DNA from: Anaeramoeba ignava BMAN
Lineage: Eukaryota; Protista; Anaeramoebae
Length of the DNA stretch: 64,000 nt
Assembly: GCA_028826165.1 (NCBI GenBank)
Contig: JAPDFW010000131.1
Span: forward strand, 78,966-142,965
Reading direction: 5' to 3'
Part shown: one piece after another, positions 35,618 to 60,665 of the stretch
Numbering within the stretch: position 1 is the stretch's first letter
Layout: every line of letters starts with the position of its first letter
Notes under the pieces: generated by a model
The model's database searches: none
What the model was told of the DNA's origin: nothing
What the model saw: only the letters and a program-made list of their open reading frames with translations
Made by a program: the position numbers and the translations under genes

Positions 35618-35701
35618 GAAAATGAAAAACAAATTAAACAAATTTCATCAAGTTTATCTTCAACAATTTTCCTTTTTAAAAATGGAAAAGCAATAGAATA
35701 T
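35618..35701 (+). pseudogene. RCC1-BTB family gene fragment, 5' of the transposon insertion
   Basis: Reads ENEKQIKQISSSLSSTIFLFKNGKAIEY, matching residues ~36-63 of the array genes. The normal first ~35 codons are absent. Confidence 0.9.
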
Positions 35702-41791: not shown

Positions 41792-42929
41792 AAAAAATTT
41801 TTTTTTAAATCAAAAATCAAAAATGAAAAATAAAATCAAAAATAAAAAATGAAAAATGAAATTGTTAGAATTGCTTTTTCAGTTTGATTTGAGAGATATT
41901 TTAGTTCATTTTTATTGCAAAATTTGTTTTGTTTGTTTTTTTTTTAATTTTATCATCATTAACGAAAAAAGGAAAAATTCAAACCGTTAAATTTCAAATC
42001 TTAGTTATTCGAATACTTTAAATAATAAATAATTGAGAATATAATTGAATATCATTTTTAAATTTTGAATTGATGAATTTTCTTTATTTAGAATTATAAT
42101 TTAATAATTCTAATAATGATATTCGAATAATAAAATATTTTAAATTTGAGAGATTCCAAAACCAAATTGATTAATTTTTTATTAAATTTTTATTCAAGAA
42201 ATAACAATAATAAATCAATAATTTTGTTTTAAATTATCCTTTCAATGATTTCTTCCTTTAATAATAAATTTAATTAAAATCAAATTTTGTTAAATTGTGG
42301 ATTGAAAAGAACATAAATTGGATTTTTTTATTATTTAGTTTTAATTAACATAGAACAACTATAAATCAATTTTTAATCAGAGATTCAAGTATTTTCCAAT
42401 ATTTCTTGTTGAATTCAGAACAAAAAAAAACAAAATATTGATTTTTTCTAATCCATTTTTTCTCAATTTTTTCCCAATTTTTTTGCTAACTAAAAATAGT
42501 TTATCAAATTTATATCTTCAATTACTTATAAAAATAATAATTCTAATCAATATATTCTTTCTTAAATATACTTTTAATTATAATTTATAATATTATTTGT
42601 AATTAAAAAATTATTAATCATTGTTTTATTTGAAAATCCAAATTTTTTTATTTTTTCAAATTTTATTAAAGTTATATAGTTATTGAAATATCTTTTGAAT
42701 AGATATTCATTTAAAAAATCTTTTCTAAATTACAAGTTAAACCATTTACTAAATTTTTACAAAAAAAAACATTTTTTCATTTTTTCATTTTTTCATTTTT
42801 TTCTTTATTTAATTTATTTTTCCTTTTCATTTTTATTTATGTTCTTTTGTTTTCAGTGCTTTTTTTTTTGTGCATATTCTTTGATTTACTTATTTCGTTT
42901 TATTTAGAATTTGTATAAACATTTTCTTT

Positions 42930-43745
42930 AATTAATAATTTAATAAATAAATTAATTAATAATTTAATAAATAATTTAATTAATAATTTAATTAATAATT
43001 TAATAAATAATTTAATAAATAATTTAATAAATAATTTAATAAATAATTTAATAAATAATTTAATAAATAATTTAATAAATAATTTAATAAATAATTTAAT
43101 AAATAATTTAATAAATAATTTAATAAATAATTTAATAAATAATTTAATAAATAATTTAATTAATAAATTTAATAAATAATTTAATAAATAATTTAATTTA
43201 ATAAATTAATAAATAATTTAATTAATAATTTAATAAATAATTTAATAAATAATTTAATAAATAATTTAATAAATAATTTAATAAATAAATTAATAAATAA
43301 TTTAATTAATAATTTAATTAATAATTTAATAAATAATTTAATAAATAATTTAATAAATAATTTAATAAATAATTTAATTAATAATTTAATAAATAATTTA
43401 ATAATTTAATAAATAATTTAATAAATAATAATTTAATAAATAATTTAATAAATAATTTAATAAATAATTTAATAAATAATTTAATAAATAATTTAATAAA
43501 TAATTTAATTAAATAATTTAATTAATTTAATAAATAATTTAATAAATAATTTATTAATAATAATTTAATAAATAATTTAATTAATAATTTAATAAATAAT
43601 TTAATTAATAATTTAATTAATAATTTAATAAATAATTTAATAAATAATTTAATTAATAATTTAATAAATAATTTAATAAATAATTTAATTAATAATTTAA
43701 TAATAATTTAATAAATAATTTAATTAATAATTTAATTAATAATTT
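42930..43745. repeat. 12-bp minisatellite (AATTTAATAAAT) inside the MULE
   Basis: About 65 tandem units. Confidence 0.9.
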
Positions 43746-46709: not shown

Positions 46710-47308
46710 TAGAATATTTAAATGAAAGAGATTCATATCAAAATATTGAAAAAATCCAAATTGAAGAAAATATTCAAAAAATAACTTTTGGTTATCAAGA
46801 TAATGAAGCTATTTTAACAATAGAAGGAAATGTATTTGCCAAAGGAATAGATATTAATCCAAATAATCCAAAAGAATTTATCAATATTTCATCATTAATT
46901 GAAGATACAAATGATAGAATAATTGAAAATATTGTTTCTGGAGCTAATTCAATTTACTTATTAACTTCAAATCAAAATGCTTATGGAATTGGTTCAAACT
47001 CTTATGGTCAACTTGGTTTTGATTATCAAATCCTTCCAAAAACAGAAAAACCAATTTTAATGATGAAAAATGTTTCTAAAATATTTTCAGGAAACAATTC
47101 AAAACATGTTTTTCTTTTAAATTCAAATCAAGAATTATTTGGATGTGGTAATAACGAATATACTCAACTTGGATTAGGAGAATCAAGAAAAGAAAGAAAA
47201 ATCCAAAAATTAACCAAAATCCAAAATATTCCAAAAGGCAAAATAATTGATATTCAAACTAGTTATTATCATTCAATAATGTTGATTGAAAATCAAATTC
47301 AAAATTAA
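46710..47308 (+). pseudogene. RCC1-BTB family gene fragment, 3' of the transposon insertion, truncated mid-propeller
   Basis: Continues EYLNERDSYQNIEKIQIEENIQK...HSIMLIEN and then stops (QIQN*). Confidence 0.9.
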
Positions 47309-47359: not shown

Positions 47360-50300
47360 ATGAATTTTAAGAAAGCTCTTGAAGAAAATGATATTCAATA
47401 TTTCAAAAATATCAACAACTTTTCTGAAATTGATTTGATAGAGGGAAACCGAATTAACTTCTTTTTTGAAACAATGAAAGAAATAACTTATGAAACAATA
47501 GACATTTTGATTAAAAAAGGAATAAATATCAATTTAATTGATTATTCAGGAAGAAATCTTTTACATACTGCAATAATAAAAAATTCAGAAATGGAAACAA
47601 TTATTTTGTTGGTTGAAAATGGGATTTTGATTAATGAAAAAGATAATGAGGGAATAACACCATTGCATTATTTATTAAGTAATTGGAAAAGAGAGAAAAA
47701 AATGGAATTAATAAACCTTTTTGTTGAAAAGGGTGCTGATATTAATGAAGAAAGTAATAATAATGAAACTGTTTTGCATTACGCTTGCAAACATGGAAAT
47801 AATTCACTTGAAATTGTTAAATATTTTGTTGAAAATGGTGTTGATGTTAATTCCAAAAATAATAGAAATGAAACTGCTTTGCATTTTATTTGTAAAAACA
47901 ATTCACTTGAAATTGTTAAATATTTTGTTGAAAGTGGTGCTGATATTAACTTCAAAAATAATAGAAATGAAACTGCTTTGCATTTTGCTTGTAAAAATAG
48001 TTCACTTGAAATTATTGATTATTTGATTGGAAAAGGAAGTGATCTTAATGCGAAAACAACTGACAATGAAAATGTTTTGCATTTTGCTTCTCAAAACAAG
48101 TCAGTTGCAGTTGTTAAATATTTTGTTGAGAAGAGTGTTGATATTAAAGCAAAAACGAATCAAAACGAAACAGTTCTACATTACGCTTGCAAAAACCCAA
48201 ATGTTACACTTGAAATGATTGAATATTTGATTTCACACGAACTCGATATTAATGCCAAAAACAGAAGAGATGAAACGCCGCTTTGCTTATATTTTTCGGC
48301 AAATAATTCACTTGAAAGCATCAAATTTCTTGTTAAAAATGGTGCTGATATTCATACAAAAGGTTTTTGTGACGAAACACTCCTTCATATTGCTTGCCGG
48401 AAAGAAAAGACAAAGGAGTCCTTAGAAATGGTGAAATATTTGATTGAAAGTGGGATTAATGTGAATGCAGCAAATCGTGATGATGAAACTGCTTTGCATA
48501 TTGCTTGTCAACAAAAAAATTCATTTGAAACTATCAAATTATTAGTTGAAAATGGTGCAGATATCAATGCGAAATCATTTGTGTTCACTCTTTGTGGTAT
48601 TGAGCAAGAAACAGCTTTGCATCTTGCTTTTTCAAGTCAATCATTTGAAGTAGTGAAATATTTGATTGAAAAAGGAGCGAACATTAATGAAACAACGCAT
48701 ATGAATGAATCAATTTTGCACCAAGCTTTCTATAGAGATTTACCTTTTGAGAATATTGAGTATTTGATTGAGAATGGAGCTGATATTAATAAGAAGATAT
48801 ATACTGGTGGCAACATATTGCATCATTTGTGTTTCAGAAGCAATACAAACATAAAAATATTTGATTATTTGATTTCAAAAGGAGCTGATATTAATGCTAA
48901 AACAAAAAACAATGAAACAGTTTTGCATTATGCTTGCCAAAATGAAAATAATTCACTTGATTTTCTTGAGTATTTAGTTTCAAAAGGAATTGATATTAAT
49001 GCTAAAACAGATGAAAACGAAACTGTTTTGCATTATGCTTGCCAAAATAAAAATAATTCACTTGAAATAATTAAGTATTTGGTTTCAAAAGGAGCTGATA
49101 TTAATGCCAAAACAAAAAATAATGAAACAGTTTTGCATTATGCTTGTAGATATTCTACATCGGTTGATTTAATTGATTATTTGATTTCAAAAGGAGCTGA
49201 TATTAATGCTAAAACAAATGAAAATGAAACAGTTTTGCATTATGCTTGTAAAAATGAAAATAATTCACTTGATTTTCTCAAGTATTTGGTTTCAAAAGGA
49301 GCTGATATTAATGCTAAAACAGATGAGAATGAAACAGTTTTGCATTATGCTTGCCAAAATGAAAATAATTCACTTGAAATTATTGATTATTTGATTTCAA
49401 AAGGAACTGATATTAATGCCAAAACAAATGAAAATGAAACAGTTCTACATTTTGGTTGTAAATTCCATCATAAATTCAAGTTCATTAAACTTCTTGTTGA
49501 AAAAGGAGCTGATATTCATGCCAAAACAGATAAAAACGAAACTCCTTTGCATTTTGCTGTATCTGACCCACATTGGAGAGATTATGAAATGATTAACTTC
49601 TTGATTTCCAAAGGATCCGATATTAACACAAAAAATGATGAAAATAAAACACCATTTATACTATCATGTGAAATACCATCAAGAATTGATGAATTGATCT
49701 TTATAATAATGCTATTAAATGATCCAAACTTTTACGATTTGAAATATAGTCATATAAGATCAATTTTTTCGGAATTTTTCACTTCGATTTATTCCCTTAA
49801 CGAAGATTTAAATAATTTACTCAAATCAAGTGATAACTTTTCAGATTTAACAATTCAATCAAATGATTTTTCAAAATTTCATGTTCACAAATTACTTCTA
49901 TTGACAAGATTGGATAATGACTTGAAAACACTGCAAAATTTCATTAACTTTTGCCAACAAAAATCAAAATCAATTGTTCATTCTGCTCTAAATTTTCTTT
50001 ATTCAGGATTCATTGATTTTGAGTATTTATCCCAAAAATTTCGTGAAATCTCTTCAAATTCTTCAGATTTCTTTATTGAAAGTTATCCAGATAAAGAAAA
50101 AGAAAAATTAGTTTTTGAAGAAATTTCGAAGAAACAAGAAGAATTAATCCAGTTCTTTAAAGAATTTGGATTTGATTCAAAATGGATGGAATCAAAAAAA
50201 GGAAGAAAAGGTGTTATAAAAGATTTTGATAACTTATATCACCAAGAATCAACAAAAGATTTCACAATCATTTGCCAAGAAAAAGAAATTAAAATTCATA

Positions 50301-50575
50301 AATTGATTCTAATTTTAAGAAGTGAATTGTTTAAAGGAATGTTCCAATTAAATGTTCAAGATTCTTCAAATAAAGTTCATGATTATTCAGGGAAATCTTT
50401 AGAAACAATAAATCAATTAATTTATTTTTTTTATCATGATGAGTTTTATCAAATCAAAGAAATTAATGATCCAATTATTGAAGAATTGAGAGATATGAAA
50501 GATTATTTCCAATTAAATCAATCTTCAATAATCGATTACTATTTGGAATTTTTGGAATTTTTTCAAATCATTTAA
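47360..50575 (+). CDS. Ankyrin-repeat (~20 repeats) protein with two C-terminal BTB/POZ domains
   Basis: Repeated 'GADINAKT..NETVLHYAC'. BTB1 'FSDLTIQ...FHVHKLLL...LNFLYSG' and BTB2 'KDFTIIC...IKIHKLILILRSELFKGMF...IYFFYHD'. Intronless 1071 aa. Confidence 0.92.
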   Translation: MNFKKALEENDIQYFKNINNFSEIDLIEGNRINFFFETMKEITYETIDILIKKGININLIDYSGRNLLHTAIIKNSEMETIILLVENGILINEKDNEGITPLHYLLSNWKREKKMELINLFVEKGADINEESNNNETVLHYACKHGNNSLEIVKYFVENGVDVNSKNNRNETALHFICKNNSLEIVKYFVESGADINFKNNRNETALHFACKNSSLEIIDYLIGKGSDLNAKTTDNENVLHFASQNKSVAVVKYFVEKSVDIKAKTNQNETVLHYACKNPNVTLEMIEYLISHELDINAKNRRDETPLCLYFSANNSLESIKFLVKNGADIHTKGFCDETLLHIACRKEKTKESLEMVKYLIESGINVNAANRDDETALHIACQQKNSFETIKLLVENGADINAKSFVFTLCGIEQETALHLAFSSQSFEVVKYLIEKGANINETTHMNESILHQAFYRDLPFENIEYLIENGADINKKIYTGGNILHHLCFRSNTNIKIFDYLISKGADINAKTKNNETVLHYACQNENNSLDFLEYLVSKGIDINAKTDENETVLHYACQNKNNSLEIIKYLVSKGADINAKTKNNETVLHYACRYSTSVDLIDYLISKGADINAKTNENETVLHYACKNENNSLDFLKYLVSKGADINAKTDENETVLHYACQNENNSLEIIDYLISKGTDINAKTNENETVLHFGCKFHHKFKFIKLLVEKGADIHAKTDKNETPLHFAVSDPHWRDYEMINFLISKGSDINTKNDENKTPFILSCEIPSRIDELIFIIMLLNDPNFYDLKYSHIRSIFSEFFTSIYSLNEDLNNLLKSSDNFSDLTIQSNDFSKFHVHKLLLLTRLDNDLKTLQNFINFCQQKSKSIVHSALNFLYSGFIDFEYLSQKFREISSNSSDFFIESYPDKEKEKLVFEEISKKQEELIQFFKEFGFDSKWMESKKGRKGVIKDFDNLYHQESTKDFTIICQEKEIKIHKLILILRSELFKGMFQLNVQDSSNKVHDYSGKSLETINQLIYFFYHDEFYQIKEINDPIIEELRDMKDYFQLNQSSIIDYYLEFLEFFQII

Positions 50576-50687
50576 AAAAAAAGAAAAAAAAAGGAAAAAA
50601 GCAAAAAAAAAGAGGATTTTAAAAAACTTTCATTTTTTCTTTCGTAATTTTTTTTGAAACAATGAAAAGGAAAACAAAACCAAACAA

Positions 50688-51011
50688 AAAATAGAAGAAA
50701 CAATGAAAAGAATTTATTTAAATGAAAATGAAAATGAAAAAGATTTTATAATTGAAAGAAATGAAAAACAATATAAATTTCCTAAATTAATATTAATAAT
50801 GAGAAGTGAATTATATCGAGGAATGTTTTTATCTGTTACAGAAGATAAATCAAATAAAGTTACAGATTATAGTGAATTAAGTAATAAATCATTTCAAATA
50901 TTTGAATATTGGATTTATTCAAATCAAATTAAAGATGAAATTCAAATTACACAAGAAATAATTAATGAAATTAAAATTGGAATTGATTATTTTCAATCAA
51001 ATCAAAATTAA
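50688..51011 (+). pseudogene. RCC1-BTB family 3' fragment (second BTB only, no CaaX)
   Basis: KIEETMKRIYLNENENEKDFIIER...GIDYFQSNQN* is near-identical to the C-terminal ~110 aa of the array genes and starts abruptly after the ankyrin gene. Confidence 0.85.
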
Positions 51012-51086
51012 AATTAAAATCAAAATTAAAATTAAAATTAAAATTAAAATCAAAATTAAAATTAAAATTAAAATTAAAATCAAAAT

Positions 51087-51120
51087 TCATTTTTTATTTT
51101 TCATTTTTTTCTTTTTAAAA
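51087..51120 (+). promoter_or_regulatory. Putative initiator-like core promoter (tandem TCATTTT), representative instance
   Basis: Two TCATTTTT motifs within 35 nt of the ATG. The same motif precedes most starts in the window. Confidence 0.5.
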
Positions 51121-52944
51121 ATGAATGATTGTTTATTTTTTGGTTTTAATCAAAATCCAATTCTTTTCAAAAATGAACCAGAAGAAATAACAAAACCAAT
51201 TCAATTTAAATTTGAAAATGAAAATGAAAATGAAAATGAAAAACAAATTAAACAAATTTCATCAAGTTATTTTTCAACAATTTTCCTTTTTAAAAATGGA
51301 AAAGCAATAGAATATTTAAATGATTCATATCAAAATCCTGAAAAAATCCAAATTGAAGAAAATATTCAAAAAGTAACTGTTGGCTTTTCAAATGAAGCTA
51401 TTTTAACAATAGAAGGAAATGTATTTGCCAAAGGATATAATATGAATCCAAATAATCCAAATAAATTTATCAATATTTCATCATTAATTGAAGATACAAA
51501 TGATAGAATAATTGAAGATATTGTTTCTGGTTCAGACTCTATTTACTTATTAACTTCAAATCAAAATGCTTATGGAATTGGTTTAAATGAATATGGTCAA
51601 TTTGGTGTAAAAAAACCAAAAGAAACAAAAAAACCAATTTTAATGATGAAAAATGTTTCTAAAATATTTTCAGGAAATACTTCAAGTTCTGTTTTTCTTT
51701 TAAATTCAAATCAAGAATTATTTGGATGCGGTGATAATAGATATGGTAAACTTGGATTAGGAGAATCAATAATAGAAGAAGAAATCAAAAAATTAACCAA
51801 AATCCAAAATATTCCAAAAGGCAAAATAATTGATATTCAATTTTCAAATTATCATTCAATAATGTTGATTGAAAATGAAGATGAAAATCCAAATCCAAAA
51901 AGAAAACTTTATTCATGTGGTTATTCTCAATTTAATGGAATCGATAAAAATACTTATAAATTTACTGAAATCAAATCATCTTTATTTGAAAATGATGATA
52001 ATATTCTTGATTTTTCTTGTGGATATGACAATACTTTGATTTTAACTTCCAATTCAAAATTGATAGGATTTGGAAGAAATAATTATGGTGAATTAGGAAC
52101 TGGAGATATGAAAATTCAATCAATTCCAATTCAAATTGAACTTCCTAAATTAAGATTTAATGAAAATATTTTCAATTATCATCTTTCCTGTGGATCTTTC
52201 AATTCATTTCTTTATTATTCTCCTTCTTCTTTTTCCAATCTTGAAGAAGATTTAATAAAACTATTTGAAAGAAAAGAATTTTGTGATATTTCATTTAAAA
52301 CCAAAAATGGAGAAATAATTGAAGCTCATAAATTAATATTGAAATATAGATTAAATCAAAACCAAAATGAAATTGAAAAACTTCAAGAAATTATTTCAAA
52401 AAAATCAATTAAAGAATCAAATCAAATATTTGAAATGATTTATTCAAATAATTCTAAAATAAATCCAAAATTATATTCTGAAATTAAAGAAATTATAAAT
52501 TTAAATGAAAAAATTGAAGAAACAATTAAAAGAATTTATTTAAATGAAAATGAAAAAGATTTTATAATTGAAAGAAAAGAAAAACAATATAAATTCCCTA
52601 AATTAATATTAATAATGAGAAGTGAATTATATCGAGGAATGTTTTTATCTGTAACTGAAGATAAATCTAATAAAGTTACAGATTATAGTGAATTAAGTAA
52701 TGAATCATTTCAAATATTAGAATATTGGATTTATTCAAATCAAATCAAAGATGAAATTCAAATTACAAACGAAATAATTAATGAAATTAAAACTGGAATT
52801 GATTATTTTCAATTAAATCAAACAAATCCAAATTTATTTGATTTATTAATTAACAAATTTAATAATCAAAATCACAACAACAAAGAAGAAAAGAAAGAAA
52901 AGAAAGAAAAGAAAGAAAAGAAAGAAAAATGTTTAATTTTTTAA
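51121..52944 (+). CDS. RCC1-like beta-propeller + BTB-BTB protein with CaaX (CLIF), array copy 1
   Basis: RCC1 motifs 'GxNxYGQ/E(L)G', 'SCG..NTL', and BTB 'FCDISF...IEAHKLIL', 'LILIMRSELYRGMF'. The start is set at 51121 by homology (MNDCLFFG) and the upstream TCATTTT elements. Confidence 0.92.
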   Translation: MNDCLFFGFNQNPILFKNEPEEITKPIQFKFENENENENEKQIKQISSSYFSTIFLFKNGKAIEYLNDSYQNPEKIQIEENIQKVTVGFSNEAILTIEGNVFAKGYNMNPNNPNKFINISSLIEDTNDRIIEDIVSGSDSIYLLTSNQNAYGIGLNEYGQFGVKKPKETKKPILMMKNVSKIFSGNTSSSVFLLNSNQELFGCGDNRYGKLGLGESIIEEEIKKLTKIQNIPKGKIIDIQFSNYHSIMLIENEDENPNPKRKLYSCGYSQFNGIDKNTYKFTEIKSSLFENDDNILDFSCGYDNTLILTSNSKLIGFGRNNYGELGTGDMKIQSIPIQIELPKLRFNENIFNYHLSCGSFNSFLYYSPSSFSNLEEDLIKLFERKEFCDISFKTKNGEIIEAHKLILKYRLNQNQNEIEKLQEIISKKSIKESNQIFEMIYSNNSKINPKLYSEIKEIINLNEKIEETIKRIYLNENEKDFIIERKEKQYKFPKLILIMRSELYRGMFLSVTEDKSNKVTDYSELSNESFQILEYWIYSNQIKDEIQITNEIINEIKTGIDYFQLNQTNPNLFDLLINKFNNQNHNNKEEKKEKKEKKEKKEKCLIF

Positions 52945-53041
52945 ACAAGAAATCATTAATGAAAAAAAACAGAAAAAAAAAAATTTTTTTATTTTTTTAA
53001 TTTTTTTATTTTTTCATTTTTCATTTTTTTTCTTTTTAAAA

Positions 53042-54829
53042 ATGAATGAAATTATATTTTTTGGTGATAATCAAAAACCAAAAATTATCAAAAATAGACA
53101 AGAAGGATTAACAAAACCAATTCAATTTAAATTTGAAAATGAAAATGAAAATGAAAATGAAAAACAAATTAAACAAATTTCAACATCAGATTTTTCAACA
53201 ATTTTCCTTTTTAAAAATGGAAAAGCGATAGAATATTTAAGTGAAAATGATTCATATCAAAAACCTGAAAAAATCCAAATTGAAGAAAATATTCAAAAAG
53301 TATCTGTTGGTAAACAAAATGAAGCTATTTTAACAATAGAAGGAAATGTATTTGCCAAAGGAAGATATATTAATTCAAAACGATTTATCAATATTTCATC
53401 ATTAATTAAAAATAAAAAAGATAGAATAATTGAAGATATTGTTTCTGGTTCAGACTCAATTTACTTATTAACTTCAAATCAAAATGTTTATGGAATTGTT
53501 TCAAATGAATATGGTGAACTTGGATTTGATTCTCAAACACTTTTTAAAGCAGAAAAACCAGTTTTAATGATGAAAAATGTTTCTAAAATATTTTCAGGAA
53601 ACAATTCAAGACATGTTTTTCTTTTAAATTCAAATCAAGAATTATTTGGATGCGGATATAATGAACAAGGTCAACTTGGATTAGGAGAATCAAGAAAAGA
53701 AGAAAAAATCTATAAATTAACCCAAATCCAAAGTATTCCAAATGGCAAAATAATTGATATTAAATGCGCACTTTATCATTCAATAATGTTGATTGAAAAT
53801 GAAAATGAAAATCCAAAAAGAAAACTTTATTCATGTGGTTATTCTCAATTTAATGGACTTGGCAAAAATGATGGAGATACTTATAAATTTACTGAAATCA
53901 AATCATCTTTATTTGAAAATGATGATGATGATATTCTTGAAATTTCTGTTGGTTTCTCTCATACTTTGATTTTAACCAGAAAAGGGAAATTGATTGGATT
54001 TGGATATAATGAATATGGTCAATTAGGAACTGGAGATATGAAAATTCAATCAATTCCAATTCAAATTGAACTTCCTAAATTAAGATTTAATGAAAATATT
54101 TCCAATTATAATATTTATTGTGGTTCTTTCAAATCATTTCTTTATTCTTCTCCTTCTTTTTCCAATCTTGAAGAAGATTTGATAAAATTATTTGAAAGAA
54201 AAGAATTTTGTGATATTTCATTTAAAACCGAAAATGGAGAAATAATTGAAGCTCATAAATTAATATTGAAATATAGATTAAATCAAAATCAAATTGAAAA
54301 ACTTCAAGAAATTATTTCAAATAAATCAATTAAAGAATCAAATCAAATATTTGAAATGATTTATTCAAACAATTCCAAAATAAATCCAATATTATATTCT
54401 GAAATTAAAGAAATTATAAATTCCAATGAAAAAATTGAAGAAACAATGAAAAGAATTTATTTAAATGAAAATGAAAATGAAAAAGATTTTATTATTGAAA
54501 GAAAAGAAAAACAATATAAATTTCCTAAATTAATATTAATAATGAGAAGTGAATTATATCGAAGAATGCTTTTATCTGTAACAAATGATAAATCTAATAA
54601 AGTTACAGATTATAGTGAATTAAGTAATAAATCATTTCAAATAATTGAATATTGGATTTATTCAAATCAAATTAAAGAAGAAATTAAAATTACACAAGGA
54701 ATAATTAATGAAATTGAAAAAGGAATTGATTATTTTCAATTAAATCAAACAAATCCAAATTTATTTGATTTATTAATTAACAAATTTAATAATCAAAATC
54801 AAAAAAAAGAAAATTGTTTAATCTTTTAA
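53042..54829 (+). CDS. RCC1-BTB-BTB-CaaX protein (CLIF), array copy 2
   Basis: Collinear paralogue of copy 1. Confidence 0.92.
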   Translation: MNEIIFFGDNQKPKIIKNRQEGLTKPIQFKFENENENENEKQIKQISTSDFSTIFLFKNGKAIEYLSENDSYQKPEKIQIEENIQKVSVGKQNEAILTIEGNVFAKGRYINSKRFINISSLIKNKKDRIIEDIVSGSDSIYLLTSNQNVYGIVSNEYGELGFDSQTLFKAEKPVLMMKNVSKIFSGNNSRHVFLLNSNQELFGCGYNEQGQLGLGESRKEEKIYKLTQIQSIPNGKIIDIKCALYHSIMLIENENENPKRKLYSCGYSQFNGLGKNDGDTYKFTEIKSSLFENDDDDILEISVGFSHTLILTRKGKLIGFGYNEYGQLGTGDMKIQSIPIQIELPKLRFNENISNYNIYCGSFKSFLYSSPSFSNLEEDLIKLFERKEFCDISFKTENGEIIEAHKLILKYRLNQNQIEKLQEIISNKSIKESNQIFEMIYSNNSKINPILYSEIKEIINSNEKIEETMKRIYLNENENEKDFIIERKEKQYKFPKLILIMRSELYRRMLLSVTNDKSNKVTDYSELSNKSFQIIEYWIYSNQIKEEIKITQGIINEIEKGIDYFQLNQTNPNLFDLLINKFNNQNQKKENCLIF

Positions 54830-54830
54830 A

Positions 54831-54938
54831 CAAGAAATAATTAATGAAATTCAAATTGGAATTGATTATTTTCAATTAAATCAAACAAATCCAAATTTAT
54901 TTGATTTATTAATTAAAAAATTTAATAATCAAAATTAA
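54831..54938 (+). pseudogene. Duplicated 3'-terminal fragment of an RCC1-BTB gene
   Basis: Reads QEIINEIQIGIDYFQLNQTNPNLFDLLIKKFNNQN* immediately after the stop codon of copy 2. Confidence 0.8.
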
Positions 54939-54988
54939 AATTAGAATTATTTTTTTTCATTTTTTTTTCATTTTTTTTCATTTCAAAA

Positions 54989-56842
54989 ATGAATGATTGT
55001 TTATTTTTTGGTTTAAATCAAAATCCAATTCTTTTCAAAAATAAACCAGAAGAAATAACAAAACCAATTCAATTTAAATTTAAAAATGAAAATGAAAATG
55101 AAAATGAAAATGAAAATGAAAATGAAAAACAAATTAAACAAATTTCATCAAGTGATTTTTCAACAATTTTCCTTTTTGAAAATGGAAAAGCAATAGAATA
55201 TTTAAATGAAAATGATTCAAAACAAAAACCTGAAAAAATCCAAATTGAAGAAAATATTCAAAAAGTAACTGTTGGTGAACAAAATGAAGCTATTTTAACA
55301 AAAGAAGGAAATGTATTTGCAAAAGGAGAAGATATTAATCCAAAAAATCCAAATGAATTTATCAATATTTCATCATTAATTAAAGATAAAAAAGATAGAA
55401 TAATTAAAGATATTGTTTCTGGATTTAGTTCAATTTATTTATTAACTTCAAATCAAAATGCTTATGGAATTGGTTCAAATTATTATGGTCAACTTGGTGT
55501 AAAAAAACCAAAAGAAACAAAACCAATTTTAATGATGAAAAATGTTTCTAAAATATTTTCAGGAAATACTTCACTTTATGTTTTTCTTTTAAATTCAAAT
55601 CAAGAATTATTTACATGTGGATATAATGGTTATGGTCAACTTGGATTAGGAAAATCAATAATAGAAGAAGAAGAAGAAGAAATCAAAAAATTAACCAAAA
55701 TCCAAAATATTCCAAAAGGTAAAATAATTGATATTCAATCTGAATTTTATCATTCTATGATTTTAATTGAAAATGAAGAAAATAAAAGAAAACTTTATTC
55801 ATGTGGATATTGGAAATATAATTTATTTGGCAAAGATATTTATGAATTTACTGAAATCAAATCATCTTTATTTGAAAATGATGATAATATTATTGATTTT
55901 TCTGTTGGAAATGAACATACTTTGATTTTAACTTCCAAAGGGAAATTCATTGTATTTGGAAATAATAGATATGGTCAATTAGGAACTGAAGATACAAATG
56001 ATCAATTAATTCCTATTCAAATTGAACTTCCTAAATTAAGATTTAATGAAGAAATTTCTAATTATCATATTTCTTGTGGATTTAACAAATCATTTCTTTA
56101 TTATTCTCCTTTTTCTTCTTTTTCCAATCTTGAAGAAGATTTGATAAAATTATTTGAAAGAAAAGAATTTTGTGATATTTCATTTAAAACCAAAAATGGA
56201 GAAATAATTGAAGCTCATAAATTAATATTGAAATATAGATTAAATCAAAATCAAAATCAAATTGAAAAACTTCAAGAAATTATTTCAAATAAATCAATTA
56301 AAGAATCAAATCAAATATTTGAAATGATTTATTCAAACAATTCTAAAATAAATCCAAAATTATATTCTGAAATTAAAGAAATTATAAATTCAAATGAAAG
56401 AATTGAAGAAACAATTAAAAGAATTTATTTAAATGAAAATGAAAAAGATTTTATTATTGAAAGAAAAGAAAAACAATATAAATTTCCAAAATTAATATTA
56501 ATAATGAGAAGTGAATTATATCGAGGAATGTTTTTATCTGTAACTGAAGATAAATCAAATAAAGTTACAGATTATAGTGAATTAAGTAATAAATCATTTC
56601 AAATATTTGAATATTGGATTTATTCAAATCAAATTAAAGATGAAATTCAAATTACACAAGAAATTATTAATGAAATTAAAATTGGAATTGATTATTTTCA
56701 ATTAAATCAAACAAATCCAAATTTATTTGATTTATTAATTAACAAATTTAATAATCAAAATCAAAATCAAAATCAGAAACAACAAATAATTAACAAAAAC
56801 AAAACAGAAAAAACAAAAAAAGAAAATTGTTTAATTTTTTAA
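54989..56842 (+). CDS. RCC1-BTB-BTB-CaaX protein (CLIF), array copy 3
   Basis: Collinear paralogue. Confidence 0.92.
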   Translation: MNDCLFFGLNQNPILFKNKPEEITKPIQFKFKNENENENENENENEKQIKQISSSDFSTIFLFENGKAIEYLNENDSKQKPEKIQIEENIQKVTVGEQNEAILTKEGNVFAKGEDINPKNPNEFINISSLIKDKKDRIIKDIVSGFSSIYLLTSNQNAYGIGSNYYGQLGVKKPKETKPILMMKNVSKIFSGNTSLYVFLLNSNQELFTCGYNGYGQLGLGKSIIEEEEEEIKKLTKIQNIPKGKIIDIQSEFYHSMILIENEENKRKLYSCGYWKYNLFGKDIYEFTEIKSSLFENDDNIIDFSVGNEHTLILTSKGKFIVFGNNRYGQLGTEDTNDQLIPIQIELPKLRFNEEISNYHISCGFNKSFLYYSPFSSFSNLEEDLIKLFERKEFCDISFKTKNGEIIEAHKLILKYRLNQNQNQIEKLQEIISNKSIKESNQIFEMIYSNNSKINPKLYSEIKEIINSNERIEETIKRIYLNENEKDFIIERKEKQYKFPKLILIMRSELYRGMFLSVTEDKSNKVTDYSELSNKSFQIFEYWIYSNQIKDEIQITQEIINEIKIGIDYFQLNQTNPNLFDLLINKFNNQNQNQNQKQQIINKNKTEKTKKENCLIF

Positions 56843-56876
56843 TTTTTTATCTTTTCATTTTTTTTCTTTTTCAAAA

Positions 56877-58817
56877 ATGAATGATTGTTTATTTTTTGGT
56901 TCAAATGAATATCCAAAACTTTTCAAAAATAAACCAAAAATAATAAAAAATCCAATTCAATTTAAATTTGAAAATGAAAATGAAAATGAAAATGAAAAAC
57001 AAATTAAACAAATTTCATCAAGTTCTTTTTCAACAATTTTCCTTTTTAAAAATGGAAAAGCAATAGAATATTTAAATGAAAATGATTCATATCAAAATCC
57101 TGAAAAAATCCAAATTGAAGAAAATATTCAAAAAGTAACTGTTGGTGAAAAAAATAAAGCTATTTTAACAATAGAAGGAAATGCTTTTTGCAAAATATCT
57201 TCGATTAATCCAAGAATTCGAAATAAATTTATCAATATCTCATCATTAATTAAAAATAAAAAAGATAGAATAATTGAAGATATTGTTTCTGGATTTAGTT
57301 CAATTTATTTATTAACTTCAAATCAAAATGCTTATGGAATTGGTGATAATTATTATGGTCAACTTGGTATAAACACAAGGATATATGAAAGAAAACCAAT
57401 TTTAATGATGAGAAATGTTTCTAAAATATTTTCAGGAAATACTTCAAAATATGTTTTCCTTTTAAATTCAAATCAAGAATTATTTGGATGCGGATATAAT
57501 GAACATGGCCAACTTGGTTTCAGAGAAGTAATCATAGAAGAAAAAAAAGGCAATGACTTAACCAAAATCCAAAATATTCCAAAAGGCAAAATAATTGATA
57601 TTCAATGTGGAAGTTGGCATTCAATAATGTTGATTGAAAATGAAGATGAAAATCCAAAAAGAAAACTTTATTCATGTGGGCATTATGGATATAATGGACT
57701 TGGCAAAAATGAAAATACTTATAAATTTACTGAAATCAAATCATCTTTATTTGAAAATAATGATAATATTCTTGAAATTTCTGTTGGAAGATATCATACT
57801 TTGATTTTAACTTCCAATAAAAAATTGATAGGATTTGGAGATAATTATTCTGGTCAATTAGGAACTGGAAATATAGGGTATCAATTAATTCCAATTCAAA
57901 TTGAACTTCCTAAATTAAGATTTAATGAAGATATTTTCAATTATCATATTTCTTGTGGATATCAAAATTCATTTCTTTATTATTTTCCTTCTTCTTTTTC
58001 CAATCTTGAAGAAGATTTGATAAAATTATTTAGAAGAAAAGAATTTTGTAATATTTCATTTAAAACCAAAAATGGAGAAATAATTGAAGCTCATAAATTA
58101 ATATTGAAATATAGATTAAATCAAAATCAAAATGAAATTGAAAAACTTCAAGAAATTATTTCAAAAAAATCAATTAAAGAATCAAATCAAATATTTGAAA
58201 TGATTTATTCAAACAGAATAATAAATCCAAAATTATATTCAGAAATTAAAGAAATTATAAATTCAAATGAAAGAATTGAAGAAACAATGAAAAGAATTTA
58301 TTTAAATGAAAATGAAAATGAAAATGAAAAAGATTTTATAATTGAAAGAAAAGAAAAGAAATATAAATTTCCAAAATTAATATTAATAATGAGAAGTGAA
58401 TTATATCGAGGAATGTTTTTATCTGTAACTGAAGATACTTCAAATAAAGTTACAGATTATAGTGAATTAAGTAATGAATCATTTCAAATATTTGAATATT
58501 GGATTTATTCAAATCAAATTAAAGATGAAATTCAAATTACAAAAGAAATAATCCAATTTGATGATTATGATGATTTAAATGAACATAAATTTAAATTAAT
58601 AAAATATTCTGAAACTACAAAGAAAATTACAAAAGAAATGATTGAAGAAATAGAAAGAGGAATTGATTATTTTCAATTAAATCAAACAAATCCAAATTTA
58701 TTTGATTTATTAATTAACAAATTTAATAATCAAAATCAAAATCAAAATCAGAAACAACAAATAATTAACAAAAACAAAACAGAAAAAACAAAAGAAGAAA
58801 ATTGTTTAATTGTTTAA
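56877..58817 (+). CDS. RCC1-BTB-BTB-CaaX protein (CLIV), array copy 4, with a 30-aa insertion in BTB2
   Basis: Collinear paralogue. Confidence 0.92.
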   Translation: MNDCLFFGSNEYPKLFKNKPKIIKNPIQFKFENENENENEKQIKQISSSSFSTIFLFKNGKAIEYLNENDSYQNPEKIQIEENIQKVTVGEKNKAILTIEGNAFCKISSINPRIRNKFINISSLIKNKKDRIIEDIVSGFSSIYLLTSNQNAYGIGDNYYGQLGINTRIYERKPILMMRNVSKIFSGNTSKYVFLLNSNQELFGCGYNEHGQLGFREVIIEEKKGNDLTKIQNIPKGKIIDIQCGSWHSIMLIENEDENPKRKLYSCGHYGYNGLGKNENTYKFTEIKSSLFENNDNILEISVGRYHTLILTSNKKLIGFGDNYSGQLGTGNIGYQLIPIQIELPKLRFNEDIFNYHISCGYQNSFLYYFPSSFSNLEEDLIKLFRRKEFCNISFKTKNGEIIEAHKLILKYRLNQNQNEIEKLQEIISKKSIKESNQIFEMIYSNRIINPKLYSEIKEIINSNERIEETMKRIYLNENENENEKDFIIERKEKKYKFPKLILIMRSELYRGMFLSVTEDTSNKVTDYSELSNESFQIFEYWIYSNQIKDEIQITKEIIQFDDYDDLNEHKFKLIKYSETTKKITKEMIEEIERGIDYFQLNQTNPNLFDLLINKFNNQNQNQNQKQQIINKNKTEKTKEENCLIV

Positions 58818-58850
58818 TTTTTTATCTTTTCATTTTTTTTCTTTTCAAAA

Positions 58851-60665
58851 ATGAATGATTGTTTATTTTTTGGTTCAAATGAATATCCAAAACTTATTAA
58901 AAATGAACCAAAAATAATAACAAAACCAATTCAATTTAAATTTGAAAATGAAAATGAAAATGAAAATGAAAAACAAATTAAACAAATTTCATCAAGTAAT
59001 TTTTCAACAATTTTCCTTTTTAAAAATGGAAAAGCAATAGAATATTTAAATGAAAGAGATTCATATCAAAATCCTGAAGAAATCCAAATTGAAGAAAATA
59101 TTCAAAAAGTAACTGTTGGTGAACAAAATGAAGCTATTTTAACAAAAGAAGGAAATGTATTTGCCAAAAGAGAAGATATTAATCCAAAAAATCCAAATGA
59201 ATTTATCAATATTTCATCATTAATTAAAAATAAAAAAGATAGAATAATTGAAGATATTGTTTCTGGATTTAGTTCAATTTATTTATTAACTTCAAATCAA
59301 AATGCTTATGGAATTGGTGATAATTATTATGGTCAACTTGGTATAAACACAAGGATATATGAAAGAAAACCAATTTTAATGATGAAAAATGTTTCTAAAA
59401 TATTTTCAGGAAATACTTCACTTTATGTTTTTCTTTTAAATTCAAATCAAGAATTATTTACATGTGGATATAATGGTTATGGTCAACTTGGATTAGGAAA
59501 ATCAATAATAGAAGAAGAAGAAGAAGAAATCAAAAAATTAACCAAAATCCAAAATATTCCAAAAGGTAAAATAATTGATATTCAATGTGGAAGTTGGCAT
59601 TCAGTAATGTTGATTGAAAATGAAGAAAATAAAAGAAAACTTTATTCATGTGGATATTGGAAATATAATTTATTTGGCAAAGATACTTATGAATTTACTG
59701 AAATCAAATCATCTTTATTTGAAAATGATGATGATAATATTATTGATTTTTCTGTTGGAAATGAACATACTTTGATTTTAACTTCCAAAGGGAAATTCAT
59801 TGTATTTGGAAATAATAGATATGGTCAATTAGGAACTGAAGATACAAATGATCAATTAATTCCAATTCAAATTGAACTTCCTAAATTAAGATTTAATGAA
59901 GATATTTCTAATTATCATATTTCTTGTGGATTTAATAATTCGTTCCTTTATTATTCTCCTTTTTCTTCTTTTTCCAATCTTGAAGAAGATTTGATAAAAT
60001 TATTTAGAAGAAAAGAATTTTGTGATATTTCATTTAAAACAGAAAATGGAGAAATAATTGAAGCTCATAAATTAATATTGAAATATAGATTAAATCAAAA
60101 CCAAAATCAAATTGAAAAACTTAAAGAAATTATTTCAAAAAAATCAATTAAAGAATCAAATCAAATATTTGAAATGATTTATTCAAACAATTCTAAAATA
60201 AATCCAAAATTATATTCTGAAATTAAAGAAATTATAAATTCAAATGAAAGAATAGAAGAAACAATTAAAAGAATTTATTTAAATGAAAATGAAAAAGATT
60301 TTATAATTGAAAGAAAAGAAAAACAATATAAATTTCCAAAATTAATATTAATAATGAGAAGTGAATTATATCGAGGAATGTTTTTATCTGTAACTGAAGA
60401 TAAATCCAATAAAGTTACAGATTATAGTGAATTAAGTAATAAATCATTTCAAATATTTGAATATTGGATTTATTCAAATCAAATTAAAGATGGAATTGAA
60501 ATTACACAAGAAATTATTGATGAAATTCAAATTGGAATTGATTATTTTCAATTAAATCAAACAAATCCAAATTTAATTGATTTATTAATTAAAAAATTTA
60601 ATAATCAAAATTACATCAACAAAGAAGAAAAGAAAGAAAAGAAAGAAAAATGTTTAATCTTTTAA
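58851..60665 (+). CDS. RCC1-BTB-BTB-CaaX protein (CLIF), array copy 5
   Basis: Collinear paralogue and a mosaic of copies 3 and 4. Confidence 0.92.
   Translation: MNDCLFFGSNEYPKLIKNEPKIITKPIQFKFENENENENEKQIKQISSSNFSTIFLFKNGKAIEYLNERDSYQNPEEIQIEENIQKVTVGEQNEAILTKEGNVFAKREDINPKNPNEFINISSLIKNKKDRIIEDIVSGFSSIYLLTSNQNAYGIGDNYYGQLGINTRIYERKPILMMKNVSKIFSGNTSLYVFLLNSNQELFTCGYNGYGQLGLGKSIIEEEEEEIKKLTKIQNIPKGKIIDIQCGSWHSVMLIENEENKRKLYSCGYWKYNLFGKDTYEFTEIKSSLFENDDDNIIDFSVGNEHTLILTSKGKFIVFGNNRYGQLGTEDTNDQLIPIQIELPKLRFNEDISNYHISCGFNNSFLYYSPFSSFSNLEEDLIKLFRRKEFCDISFKTENGEIIEAHKLILKYRLNQNQNQIEKLKEIISKKSIKESNQIFEMIYSNNSKINPKLYSEIKEIINSNERIEETIKRIYLNENEKDFIIERKEKQYKFPKLILIMRSELYRGMFLSVTEDKSNKVTDYSELSNKSFQIFEYWIYSNQIKDGIEITQEIIDEIQIGIDYFQLNQTNPNLIDLLIKKFNNQNYINKEEKKEKKEKCLIF

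What the first reader, a model, noticed from the sequence alone, without database searches (positions are those of the whole stretch)
51121..60665. Tandem repertoire of prenylated RCC1-BTB-BTB proteins with a constant adaptor half and hypervariable propeller loops
Seen: five intact paralogues have near-invariant BTB halves, while differences cluster at the same short positions in the propeller blades. Examples: VTVG-FS/KQ/EQ/EK; SGN-TSSS/NSRH/TSLY/TSKY; CG-DNRY/YNEQ/YNGY/YNEH; I-QFSNY/KCALY/QSEFY/QCGSW-HS; SCG-YSQF/YWKY/HYGY; G-YDN/FSH/NEH/RYH-TL; G-RNNY/YNEY/NNRY/DNYS-G; CG-SFN/SFK/FNK/YQN/FNN-SF. The broken copy at 46710-47308 supplies further variants. Substitutions are radical and often aromatic or charged. 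Established: BTB proteins with a repeat domain commonly act as Cullin-3 substrate adaptors, and RCC1 propellers bind partners through such loops. Inference: this is a variable/constant recognition repertoire under diversifying selection, possibly a cell-autonomous surveillance system that tags symbiont, pathogen or organelle-surface proteins for ubiquitination.
Basis: partly seen in the sequence, partly recalled or inferred. Interest (0 to 1): 0.88.

Follow-up and report, generated by a model that had tools for sequence, protein, structure and literature searches.

The report
Hypervariable RCC1-BTB receptor gene array
Five neighbouring genes belong to a family of about 1,260 copies in the anaerobic amoeba Anaeramoeba ignava; the proteins keep a constant ubiquitin-ligase-adaptor-like tail but vary strongly at about 30 positions on one face of a propeller-shaped binding domain, as immune-type recognition repertoires do.

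Summary
Window 51121-60665 holds five intact, intron-less tandem genes. Each encodes a 7-bladed RCC1 propeller, a tandem BTB module and a Lys-rich tail ending in CaaX (CLIF x4, CLIV).

The organism is Anaeramoeba ignava. A 26-mer from the BTB module occurs 1,263 times in the 42.8 Mb genome, in arrays of 1-6 genes.

Across about 100 paralogues nearly all positions are invariant, but about 25-40 propeller positions reach 2.5-3.5 bits of entropy. All of these lie in B-C and D-A loops or at their strand ends: 33 of 108 loop residues, against 0 of 95 in A-B and C-D loops.

- **Site models:** omega = 4.8 for 6% of codons (2dlnL = 628). All 28 selected sites are in the propeller and none in the BTB module.
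- **Neutral comparison:** hypervariable first and second codon positions are 4.5-5.7 times as diverse as 4-fold sites.
- **Recombination:** copy 5 is a gene-conversion mosaic of copies 3 and 4.
- **C-terminal module:** predicted to fold as an intramolecular BTB pseudo-dimer.
- **Cullin-3:** an orthologue exists in the genome.

The Cullin-3 adaptor role, transcription, the ligands and the immune or symbiont-surveillance role remain untested. First readers of this scan noted the same family on many other pieces of this genome. I found no paper describing it.

The parts
51121..52944 (+). copy 1: RCC1 propeller (51121-52218), BTB-BTB module (52219-52869), K/E tail + CLIF (52870-52941)
53042..54829 (+). 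copy 2: propeller (53042-54148), BTB-BTB module (54149-54796), short tail + CLIF
54989..56842 (+). copy 3, the reference for numbering: propeller aa 1-372 (54989-56104), BTB-BTB module (56105-56758), tail + CLIF (56759-56839)
56877..58817 (+). copy 4: as above, with a 29-aa insertion in the C-terminal helices and a CLIV end
58851..60665 (+). copy 5: mosaic with a copy-3 backbone and copy-4 patches (alignment codon columns 139-184 and 262-270, each including hypervariable loops); CLIF end
55013..56086 (+). span of the 25 strongest hypervariable codons of copy 3 (aa 9, 11, 12, 56, 97, 98, 146, 147, 165, 174, 196, 212, 214, 230, 253, 254, 274, 276, 308, 309, 325, 327, 338, 365, 366). They sit in the motifs G-xx-[H/S/N] (B-C loop) and G-x-N-xx-G (start of the D-A loop) and at the end of the D-A loop, in all seven blades.
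56540..56551 (+). V-T-E-D (aa 518-521) in the second BTB; it aligns with L-K-E (phi-x-E) of the CUL3 adaptor KBTBD4. D521 is invariant in the family and E520 nearly so.
56828..56839 (+). CaaX box CLIF of copy 3. The equivalents are 52930-52941, 54815-54826, 58803-58814 (CLIV) and 60651-60662.
56843..56876 (+). 34-bp spacer holding the conserved upstream element (CATTTTTTTTCTTTT[C/T]AAAAATG) found before all 32 family genes examined; a candidate minimal promoter or 5' UTR
46694..47296 (+). truncated family copy (aa 64-263). It is the right-hand part of a gene split by a Mutator-like element; the left-hand remnant (aa 44-71) is at 35618-35701.
50679..50996 (+). 3' fragment of a family gene (aa 468-571, 92% identical to copy 3) just upstream of copy 1
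54831..54923 (+). short duplicated 3' piece (aa 557-587) in the spacer after copy 2
47360..50575 (+). ankyrin-repeat protein carrying the same two-part BTB module (31% identity over 250 aa): a different binder on a related constant module

Best explanation
The five genes belong to a family specific to the A. ignava lineage, with about 1,260 copies. It is a germline-encoded repertoire of cytosolic binding proteins.

Shown here:
- Each protein is a 7-bladed RCC1-type propeller. Its B-C and D-A loops, which by propeller topology form the 'top' face, carry about 25-40 hypervariable positions rich in Tyr, Asn, Asp, Ser and Phe.
- The rest of the propeller and the whole C-terminal module are held almost constant by purifying selection.
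- Hypervariable codons change several times faster than neutral sites.
- Short-tract gene conversion between paralogues moves whole loops between copies.

Predicted:
- The C-terminal module folds as two BTB units packed like a BTB dimer within one chain.

Inferred:
- The second BTB docks on the organism's Cullin-3, so each paralogue would present a different ligand for ubiquitination.
- The fifth of members with a polybasic tail and CaaX, including all five here, would do this from the cytosolic face of membranes.
- The ligands are numerous and fast-evolving. Foreign proteins from prey, symbionts, viruses or mobile elements are the likeliest class.

Step odds: binding repertoire under diversifying selection 0.8; Cul3 adaptor output 0.5; non-self or symbiont surveillance 0.3.
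For: - **Domains:** Pfam RCC1, RCC1_2 and BTB score above their cut-offs in all five copies.
- **Whole-protein model:** AF2 pLDDT 85, pTM 0.78. Foldseek TM 0.75-0.81 to RCC1, HERC2 and RPGR RCC1-like domains.
- **Copy number:** 1,263 hits of a BTB 26-mer, control 0. 1,332 database proteins match, and all those looked up are A. ignava.
- **Entropy map:**
- **Location of hypervariable sites:** 33/108 residues in B-C and D-A loops, 0/95 in A-B and C-D loops, p = 8e-11.
- **UVR8 correspondence:** G-xx-H aligns with the G-WR-HT motif of UVR8.
- **Site models:** M2a against M1a gives 2dlnL = 628, omega2 = 4.8 for 6.3% of codons. All 28 selected sites are in the propeller. A star tree gives omega2 = 5.5.
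- **Neutral comparison:** 4-fold diversity is 0.093, and 0.149 next to hypervariable sites, against 0.53 and 0.42 at hypervariable codon positions 1 and 2.
- **Purifying selection elsewhere:** BTB omega = 0.12. All 32 ORFs are intact, against P of about 1e-52 under neutrality.
- **Mosaicism:** runs tests p <= 0.005 in all four trios, < 1e-4 for copy 5.
- **Loop diversity:** 23-80 variants per loop among 97 proteins; every combination is unique.
- **C-terminal module:** pLDDT 90; VIA Z = 15.1 over 192 residues to single-chain tethered BTB dimers, against Z <= 11 for single BTBs.
- **Cul3 compatibility:** KBTBD4 alignment with phi-x-E; a Cul3 orthologue at G000:C58.
Against: - **No transcription evidence.** The only run holding the stretch is of unknown kind and gave short shared unitigs. 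None of the 120 listed paralogues has a transcriptome-derived twin.
- **No Cul3 binding test.** The complex job could not be run.
- **Generic BTB fold.** The second BTB resembles transcription-factor BTBs as much as Cul3 adaptors.
- **Saturated partition.** With its own branch lengths the hypervariable partition gives omega = 1.07 at a saturated tree length of 53.
- **Elevated local synonymous diversity.** Synonymous diversity is about 2 times higher within two codons of hypervariable sites. Part of the excess could therefore be locally older alleles or a hot spot.
- **Recombination** inflates site-model likelihood-ratio tests.
- **Face assignment is indirect.** It rests on strand order, not on coordinates, which the tools do not release.
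- **Ligands are unknown.**
Confidence: 0.6

Rival explanations
1. Concerted evolution without positive selection. Gene conversion keeps the framework young-looking, while old neutral loop alleles persist because diverged patches escape conversion. Gene-wide dS then understates the age of the loops.
For: - Pervasive mosaicism.
- Star-like BTB tree, with only 2 of 29 inner branches supported.
- Synonymous diversity rises near hypervariable codons.
- The hypervariable-only partition gives omega = 1.07.
Against: - The conversion tracts seen in copy 5 include hypervariable loops rather than skipping them. Conversion would therefore homogenise the loops too unless diversity is favoured.
- Hypervariable positions 1 and 2 are still 2.8-3.6 times as diverse as 4-fold sites in the flanking two codons.
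- Neutral sites cannot exceed neutral diversity.
- The exact two-motifs-per-blade pattern on one face is what ligand contact predicts.
Confidence: 0.13
2. A recognition repertoire with a different output: not Cul3 substrate delivery but allorecognition, mating or incompatibility (as in fungal HET/NWD propellers), regulation of the expanded small-GTPase set, or decoys or sequestering binders. The BTB module would serve only as a scaffold.
For: - The same loop pattern occurs in the fungal HNWD non-self recognition genes (PMC1805685).
- RCC1-like domains commonly bind small GTPases (established knowledge). Rab families are expanded in Anaeramoeba (PMC11550330).
- The BTB fold matches non-Cul3 BTBs equally well.
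Against: - About 1,260 variants far exceed any GTPase set.
- The BTB module is the most conserved part (omega = 0.12), keeps an acidic phi-x-E-like motif, and a Cul3 orthologue exists.
- RCC1-BTB proteins of animals (RCBTB1, IBTK) are reported CUL3 adaptors (own knowledge, not checked here).
Confidence: 0.15
3. A recent burst of selfish or neutral amplification with relaxed constraint on surface loops. On this view the family is largely junk DNA that happens to stay open.
For: - Very high copy number; low framework divergence (pi4 = 0.09).
- Fragments and a transposon-split copy in the window.
- A satellite derived from the gene.
- No RNA evidence.
Against: - All 32 ORFs examined are intact, although each has about 370 single-base routes to a stop codon (P of about 1e-52). 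The sample is biased towards best-scoring hits.
- 70% of codons have omega = 0.04.
- Loop sites exceed the neutral rate rather than merely reaching it.
- The arrays sit among ordinary genes and show no transposon ends of their own.
Confidence: 0.07
4. Programmed, targeted mutagenesis (for example retroelement-templated or enzyme-targeted) writes diversity into the loops.
For: - Variation is extremely focal.
- Synonymous diversity is raised in the adjacent codons.
- Codon variants of the NAT type (Tyr, Asn, Asp) are over-represented.
Against: - No reverse transcriptase or template repeat appears among the window's ORFs.
- At least 14 separate 2-4-codon targets per gene at structurally equivalent loops would be needed.
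- GC3 of hypervariable codons equals the background (0.05).
- The diversity is between germline paralogues, not within one locus.
Confidence: 0.03

Closest known systems
MATH-BTB and F-box adaptor expansions of Caenorhabditis and plants (Thomas 2006, PMC1524861, as summarised in PMC4334554)
   Same: Large lineage-specific families of cullin-RING adaptors arranged in tandem. Positive selection acts in the substrate-binding domain and not in the cullin-binding domain. An immune role against foreign proteins has been proposed.
   Different: Here the variable domain is an RCC1 propeller. The family has about 1,260 nearly identical-framework copies in a unicellular anaerobe (about 5% of the genome). 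The BTB is a tandem pseudo-dimer, and a subset carries CaaX. Cullin binding is untested.
Fungal NWD/HNWD (HET-E/D/R) WD40 non-self recognition genes (PMC1805685, PMC2873952)
   Same: A beta-propeller with a highly conserved framework. Positively selected residues lie in the d-a loop and the b-c turn on top of the propeller. Diversity is reshuffled by concerted evolution and recombination.
   Different: There the diversity lies among repeats within about 10 NLR genes with NACHT/HET effector domains. Here it lies among more than 1,000 whole genes with a BTB effector module and an RCC1 fold rather than WD40.
RCBTB1/2 and IBTK (RCC1-like domain plus two BTB units)
   Same: The same domain order. 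The genome's annotators named members 'Btk-binding protein-related' and 'RCC1 and BTB domain-containing protein'. The ESM Atlas places the protein next to RCBTB1-type clusters.
   Different: Animals have single-copy, conserved genes with no hypervariable face. Orthology was not tested. Their role as CUL3 adaptors is from my own knowledge and was not checked here.
UVR8 (RCC1-fold photoreceptor)
   Same: The best sequence match among solved structures (E = 8e-25). The family's G-xx-H and G-x-N-xx-G positions align with the G-WR-HT and G-W-x-x-Y-G positions of UVR8. In UVR8 these positions form the interaction face (own knowledge).
   Different: UVR8 has fixed Trp/Arg residues there and no BTB domain. 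It serves only as a structural guide.
Single-chain tethered BTB dimers (PDB 4U2M, 4U2N)
   Same: The whole 227-residue C-terminal module superposes on two BTB domains joined in one chain (Z = 15.1 and 14.5).
   Different: Those are engineered fusions of transcription-factor POZ domains. Here the first unit is degenerate: it lacks the third strand and the acidic motif.

Membership tests
RCC1-like domain (7-bladed propeller) | RCC1 repeat profile matches above curated cut-offs | tested here: met
   PF00415 and PF13540 score above cut-off in all five copies. PF25390 scores above cut-off in three and just below in two.
RCC1-like domain (7-bladed propeller) | Seven four-stranded blades, closed by the N-terminal strand | tested here: met
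   The AF2 strand order gives 7 x (A, B, C, D), with residues 4-9 as strand D of blade 7. Foldseek TM is 0.75-0.81 to RCC1, HERC2 and RPGR.
RCC1 as Ran exchange factor | Catalytic wedge and Ran-contact residues | not tested
   No residue-level comparison with RCC1 was made. The candidate contact face is the hypervariable one, which argues against a single conserved GTPase partner.
BTB/POZ domain | BTB profile match and fold | tested here: met
   PF00651 scores above cut-off in all five copies. VIA Z is about 11 to KBTBD2, KLHL26, SPOP, KEAP1 and BCL6 BTBs for residues 63/85-220 of the module.
RCBTB/IBTK-type architecture | RCC1-like domain followed by two BTB units | tested here: met
   Two BTB stretches in Pfam. 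The module aligns over 192 residues with a two-BTB single chain.
RCBTB/IBTK-type architecture | Orthology to animal RCBTB1/2 or IBTK | not tested
   Only annotators' names and Atlas neighbours are available.
BTB-type Cullin-3 substrate adaptor | phi-x-E motif in the loop after helix A2/A3 of the BTB | tested here: inconclusive
   V518-T519-E520-D521 aligns with L-K-E of KBTBD4 (E = 0.003). D521 is invariant and E520 slightly variable. Diverged relatives have V-x-D.
BTB-type Cullin-3 substrate adaptor | 3-box or BACK helices after the BTB | tested here: inconclusive
   Two to three helices follow the BTB (557-570, 579 onward). No specific 3-box comparison was made.
BTB-type Cullin-3 substrate adaptor | A Cullin-3 in the same organism | tested here: met
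   The last exon of the cullin at G000:C58 (L036:4110-5657) scores 428 bits to human CUL3, against 363 to CUL4B and 300 to CUL1. The other cullin loci are Cul1/2- or Cul4-like.
BTB-type Cullin-3 substrate adaptor | Physical binding to the Cul3 N-terminal domain | not testable with these tools
   Complex prediction (BTB module + Cul3 exon-1 product) was unreachable five times. The spliced Cul3 N-terminal domain was not joined.
CaaX-prenylated protein | C-terminal Cys-aliphatic-aliphatic-X preceded by a basic stretch | tested here: met
   CLIF x4 and CLIV, each after a K/E-rich tail. Only 23 of 120 family proteins have such an end.
CaaX-prenylated protein | Actual lipid modification and membrane association | not testable with these tools
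   This needs biochemistry.
Diversifying recognition repertoire (as MATH-BTB/F-box, HNWD) | Site-specific omega > 1 confined to the binding domain | tested here: met
   M2a omega2 = 4.8, with 28 of 28 selected sites in the propeller. Star tree gives 5.5. The 4-fold comparison agrees. Caveats are and the recombination shown.
Diversifying recognition repertoire (as MATH-BTB/F-box, HNWD) | Selected sites grouped on one interaction surface | tested here: met
   33/108 against 0/95 loop residues. Assigned by strand topology, not by 3D coordinates.
Diversifying recognition repertoire (as MATH-BTB/F-box, HNWD) | Reshuffling by recombination or gene conversion | tested here: met
   Runs tests on four trios.
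Diversifying recognition repertoire (as MATH-BTB/F-box, HNWD) | Variable, non-self ligands | not testable with these tools
   No ligand information is available.

The most novel reading that the evidence does not exclude
A unicellular anaerobic eukaryote devotes about 5% of its genome to a germline-encoded, antibody-like repertoire of more than 1,000 cytosolic (and partly membrane-anchored) RCC1-propeller receptors. These would feed diverse foreign proteins, from prey bacteria, symbionts, viruses or mobile elements, into Cullin-3 ubiquitination: a cell-autonomous immune or symbiont-management system of a new molecular type.
Probability: 0.3. Interest if true: 0.9.

Novelty: new variant of a known kind. 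Interest (0 to 1): 0.8.

Why it matters
Adaptively diversifying cullin-adaptor families and propeller-based non-self receptors are known from nematodes, plants and fungi. Their ligands and immune roles are still largely conjecture.

This family is an unusually clean and large case:
- about 1,260 copies;
- a near-invariant scaffold;
- about 30 loop positions with omega of about 5;
- visible loop shuffling between copies;
- two localisation classes, with and without CaaX.

The host is a protist whose biology centres on housing bacteria in symbiosomes and eating others. If the proteins are expressed and bind foreign proteins, the family would show that large germline recognition repertoires coupled to ubiquitination exist in free-living single cells. 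It would also give a tractable scaffold for finding what such repertoires recognise. The predicted single-chain BTB pseudo-dimer suggests how more than 1,000 paralogues could avoid cross-dimerising with each other.

Tried and rejected
- **'TAA stops inside'.** I first read these as pseudogenes. They are not: most copies simply end at ...KFNNQN, before an (AAAATT/AAAATC)n microsatellite. All 32 genes extracted are intact.
- **NG86 dN/dS.** These ratios are inflated about 2.5-fold by AT bias (ML M0 omega = 0.33, against 0.88). I rely on the ML site models and the 4-fold comparison instead.
- **Hypervariable-only codon partition.** It is saturated (tree length 53, omega = 1.07) and not usable as a test.
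- **RNA evidence.** One run of unknown kind; short unitigs shared among paralogues; no verdict on transcription.
- **Locus tags of family members** were not found in the held supplements of the genome paper.
- **Complex prediction** (BTB module + Cul3 exon-1 product) was unreachable five times. No verdict.
Smaller requests to the same tool worked.
- **Five cullin loci** turned out Cul1/2- or Cul4-like before the Cul3 locus was found.
- **CaaX as a clade marker was rejected:** 9 changes on the tree against 9.2 in shuffles.
- **A limited cassette set was rejected:** most loop variants are singletons.

Full report
**What is there**

Window 50965-60665 holds five head-to-tail ORFs on the + strand. 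Their family start MNDCLFFG places the first at 51121. The genes are 51121-52944, 53042-54829, 54989-56842, 56877-58817 and 58851-60665, coding for 595-646 aa without introns. They are separated by only 33-159 bp.

Pfam finds RCC1 repeats and BTB above the curated cut-offs in all five. All five end in a Lys/Glu-rich tail plus CaaX: CLIF four times and CLIV once.

Among the five, the propeller half is 74-91% identical and the BTB half 90-96%. Variable columns number 136/372 against 30/218 (p = 9e-10).

**Organism and family size**

All named database relatives are Anaeramoeba ignava proteins. The genome is 42.8 Mb at about 20% G+C.

A 26-mer from the BTB module occurs 1,263 times at up to 2 mismatches, and the reversed control occurs 0 times. 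The hits lie in arrays of 1-6 genes with a period of 1.8-2.2 kb. At about 1.85 kb per gene this is about 5% of the genome.

The in-frame 'TAA stops' reported are not breaks. Most copies end at ...KFNNQN and run into an (AAAATT/AAAATC)n microsatellite. All 32 genes I could extract are intact. Only about a fifth of members have the CaaX tail: 23 of 120. The tail is scattered over the BTB tree, needing 9 changes against 9.2 in shuffles.

Every relative with the same architecture that I looked up, down to 31% identity, is from A. ignava. The nearest other species' protein is a 1,590-aa A. flamelloides protein at 31% identity. The RCC1 + BTB architecture as such is widespread in eukaryotes.

**The variable/constant pattern**

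Over 96 other paralogues the entropy is near zero almost everywhere. About 25 positions exceed 2.5 bits and about 40 exceed 2.0 bits, all of them in the propeller region (one lies in the linker just after it).

They fall in two short motifs in every blade, G-xx-[H/S/N] and G-x-N-xx-G, plus a site just before the next inner strand.

The AF2 model (pLDDT 85.3, pTM 0.78) is a 7-bladed RCC1 propeller, with Foldseek TM 0.75-0.81 to RCC1, HERC2 and RPGR. Assigning strands A-D from the model:
- 33 of 108 residues in B-C and D-A loops are hypervariable.
- 0 of 95 residues in A-B and C-D loops are hypervariable (p = 8e-11).
- The other six hypervariable sites lie at the adjoining ends of strands D and A.

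B-C and D-A loops form the top face of a propeller. This is stated for WD40 propellers in PMC1805685. I assigned the face from that topology because model coordinates are not released.

The G-xx-H pair aligns with the Trp-Arg of UVR8's G-WR-HT motif.

Hypervariable residues are 18.5% Tyr, 12% Asn, 9% Glu, 9% Ser, 8.5% Asp and 7% Phe. Each loop has 23-80 different versions among 97 proteins, mostly singletons. No two proteins share a combination.

**Selection**

Simple NG86 counts gave dN/dS of 0.9-1.3 for the propeller half and 0.3-0.5 for the BTB half at equal dS. In this AT-rich genome NG86 inflates omega about 2.5-fold: the ML M0 omega is 0.33.

I therefore wrote GY94-F3x4 site models for 32 genes and 572 codons:
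- M2a beats M1a by 2dlnL = 628.
- 70% of codons have omega = 0.04, 24% have omega = 1, and 6.3% have omega = 4.8.
- All 28 sites with posterior above 0.95 are in the propeller and none in the BTB module.
- A star tree gives omega = 5.5 and 2dlnL = 858, so the result does not hang on topology.

A comparison free of site counting agrees. 4-fold sites have diversity 0.093 (CI 0.063-0.126), and 0.149 within two codons of hypervariable sites. Hypervariable codon positions 1 and 2 have 0.53 and 0.42. GC3 at hypervariable codons equals the background.

Each gene has about 370 single-base routes to a stop codon, yet 32 of 32 genes are open (P of about 1e-52 under neutrality). This sample is biased towards the best hits.

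Caveats:
- Recombination inflates such likelihood-ratio tests.
- Synonymous diversity rises about 2-fold right beside hypervariable codons.
- A hypervariable-only partition with free branch lengths is saturated and gives omega = 1.07.

Part of the excess may therefore reflect older alleles kept at the loops. That reading also needs selection for diversity, because conversion tracts do cover the loops.

**Recombination**

Copy 5 has a copy-3 backbone with copy-4 patches at alignment columns 139-184 and 262-270, each carrying hypervariable loops. The informative sites form 24 runs where 65.6 are expected (p < 1e-4). Three other trios are also clustered. The BTB tree is star-like.

**The constant module**

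Residues 372-598, folded alone, give pLDDT 90.4. The best structural matches are engineered single chains holding two POZ domains (4U2M, 4U2N): Z = 15.1 and 14.5, with 192 and 189 residues aligned over model residues 8-218 and 8-225. Single BTBs reach Z <= 11 on the second half only.

The module is therefore predicted to be an intramolecular BTB pseudo-dimer whose first unit is degenerate.

The second unit aligns with the CUL3 adaptor KBTBD4 and has V-T-E-D where KBTBD4 has the phi-x-E motif L-K-E. D521 is invariant.

The neighbouring ankyrin-repeat gene (47360-50575) carries the same two-part module at 31% identity.

**Cullins**

The genome has about nine cullin loci. Their exons were searched one by one, by reference:
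- C71:671900-674700 is Cul1/2-like.
- C74, C64, C71:407200-410400 and C109 are Cul4-like or paralogues of those.
- C57 is Cul1-like.
- C58 is the Cul3 orthologue: 428 bits to CUL3, against 363 to CUL4B.

Exon 1 of the Cul3 gene (L036:216-569) encodes the N-terminal tail and helices up to ...ILMYL.

A co-fold of the BTB module with the exon-1 product was requested five times and never answered. Cullin binding is therefore untested.

**Transcription**

Only one public run, of unknown kind, holds the stretch. It yields short unitigs shared among paralogues, so nothing can be said about RNA. No listed paralogue has a transcriptome-derived twin, whereas two diverged RCC1-BTB proteins do.

A conserved 25-30-nt element precedes the ATG of all 32 genes. 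This could be a minimal promoter, which would fit the tiny spacers. That is inference.

**Literature**

The genome paper (PMC11550330) does not mention RCC1, BTB, cullin or ubiquitin in its main text. A supplement lists PANTHER names of this kind only among transfer candidates, mostly in A. flamelloides. I found no paper on this family, though the library searched is limited.

The concept has two precedents:
- MATH-BTB and F-box adaptors (Thomas 2006, via PMC4334554).
- Fungal HNWD propellers, with selected residues in the d-a loop and b-c turn plus concerted evolution (PMC1805685).

**Verdict**

The best reading is a very large germline repertoire of binders under diversifying selection. The family is a new variant of a known kind, notable for its RCC1 scaffold, its scale, its pseudo-dimeric BTB module and its CaaX subset.

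The Cul3 adaptor output is plausible (about 0.5). A surveillance role is conjecture (about 0.3).

The scan's first readers had already flagged the same family on many other pieces of this genome.

Noticed in passing
window 35694-46717: An ~11-kb Mutator-like element with terminal inverted repeats (…CCTATTTTGATCTACTGCCTA…) and a MULE transposase ORF (39563-41791). It splits an old RCC1-BTB copy whose halves lie at 35618-35701 and 46694-47296.
   Followed up: partly
window 22456-24120: A satellite of about 9.5 units (period ~173 bp, sub-period ~98 bp). Its unit resembles the propeller/BTB boundary of the family (the codons for EEDLIKL…).
   Followed up: partly
upstream 30 nt of each gene, e.g. 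window 56846-56876 and 58820-58850: A conserved element, CATTTTTTTTCTTTT(C/T)AAAAATG, precedes all 32 family genes examined. It is a candidate minimal promoter or 5' UTR and would explain how spacers of 33-34 bp can suffice.
   Followed up: partly
loci L005-L030, downstream of the stop codons: Non-CaaX copies end in N-Q-N codons that run straight into an (AAAATT/AAAATC)n hexamer microsatellite. A C-to-T change in AATCAA creates the stop, so the length of the tail is set by the microsatellite.
   Followed up: no
window 47360-50575: A 1,071-aa ankyrin-repeat protein with the same half-BTB + helices + BTB module (31% identity). This suggests several binder scaffolds share one constant module in this genome.
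   Followed up: partly
window 58560-58650 (copy 4, after aa ~556): A 29-aa insertion (FDDYDDLNEHKF…) in the C-terminal helices, in copy 4 only. The spacer after copy 2 (54831-54923) repeats the 3' end of the gene. Both are signs of unequal exchange at the 3' ends.
   Followed up: no
G000:C64, C71, C74, C109 (L032-L035): Four of the cullin loci examined are Cul4-like, an unusual number for a protist. Cul1 is tandemly duplicated on C57.
   Followed up: partly
proteins P0122, P0124, P0126, P0128: A. ignava also has 838-1,096-aa proteins named 'protein aardvark', in which an N-terminal extension is fused to the same RCC1-BTB body (52-73% identity).
   Followed up: no
window 389-2581, 7102-7905, 33342-35411: Ordinary nuclear genes flank the array: a TOR-type kinase C-terminus, a myotubularin phosphatase and Ndc80. 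The array therefore sits in normal gene space.
   Followed up: yes
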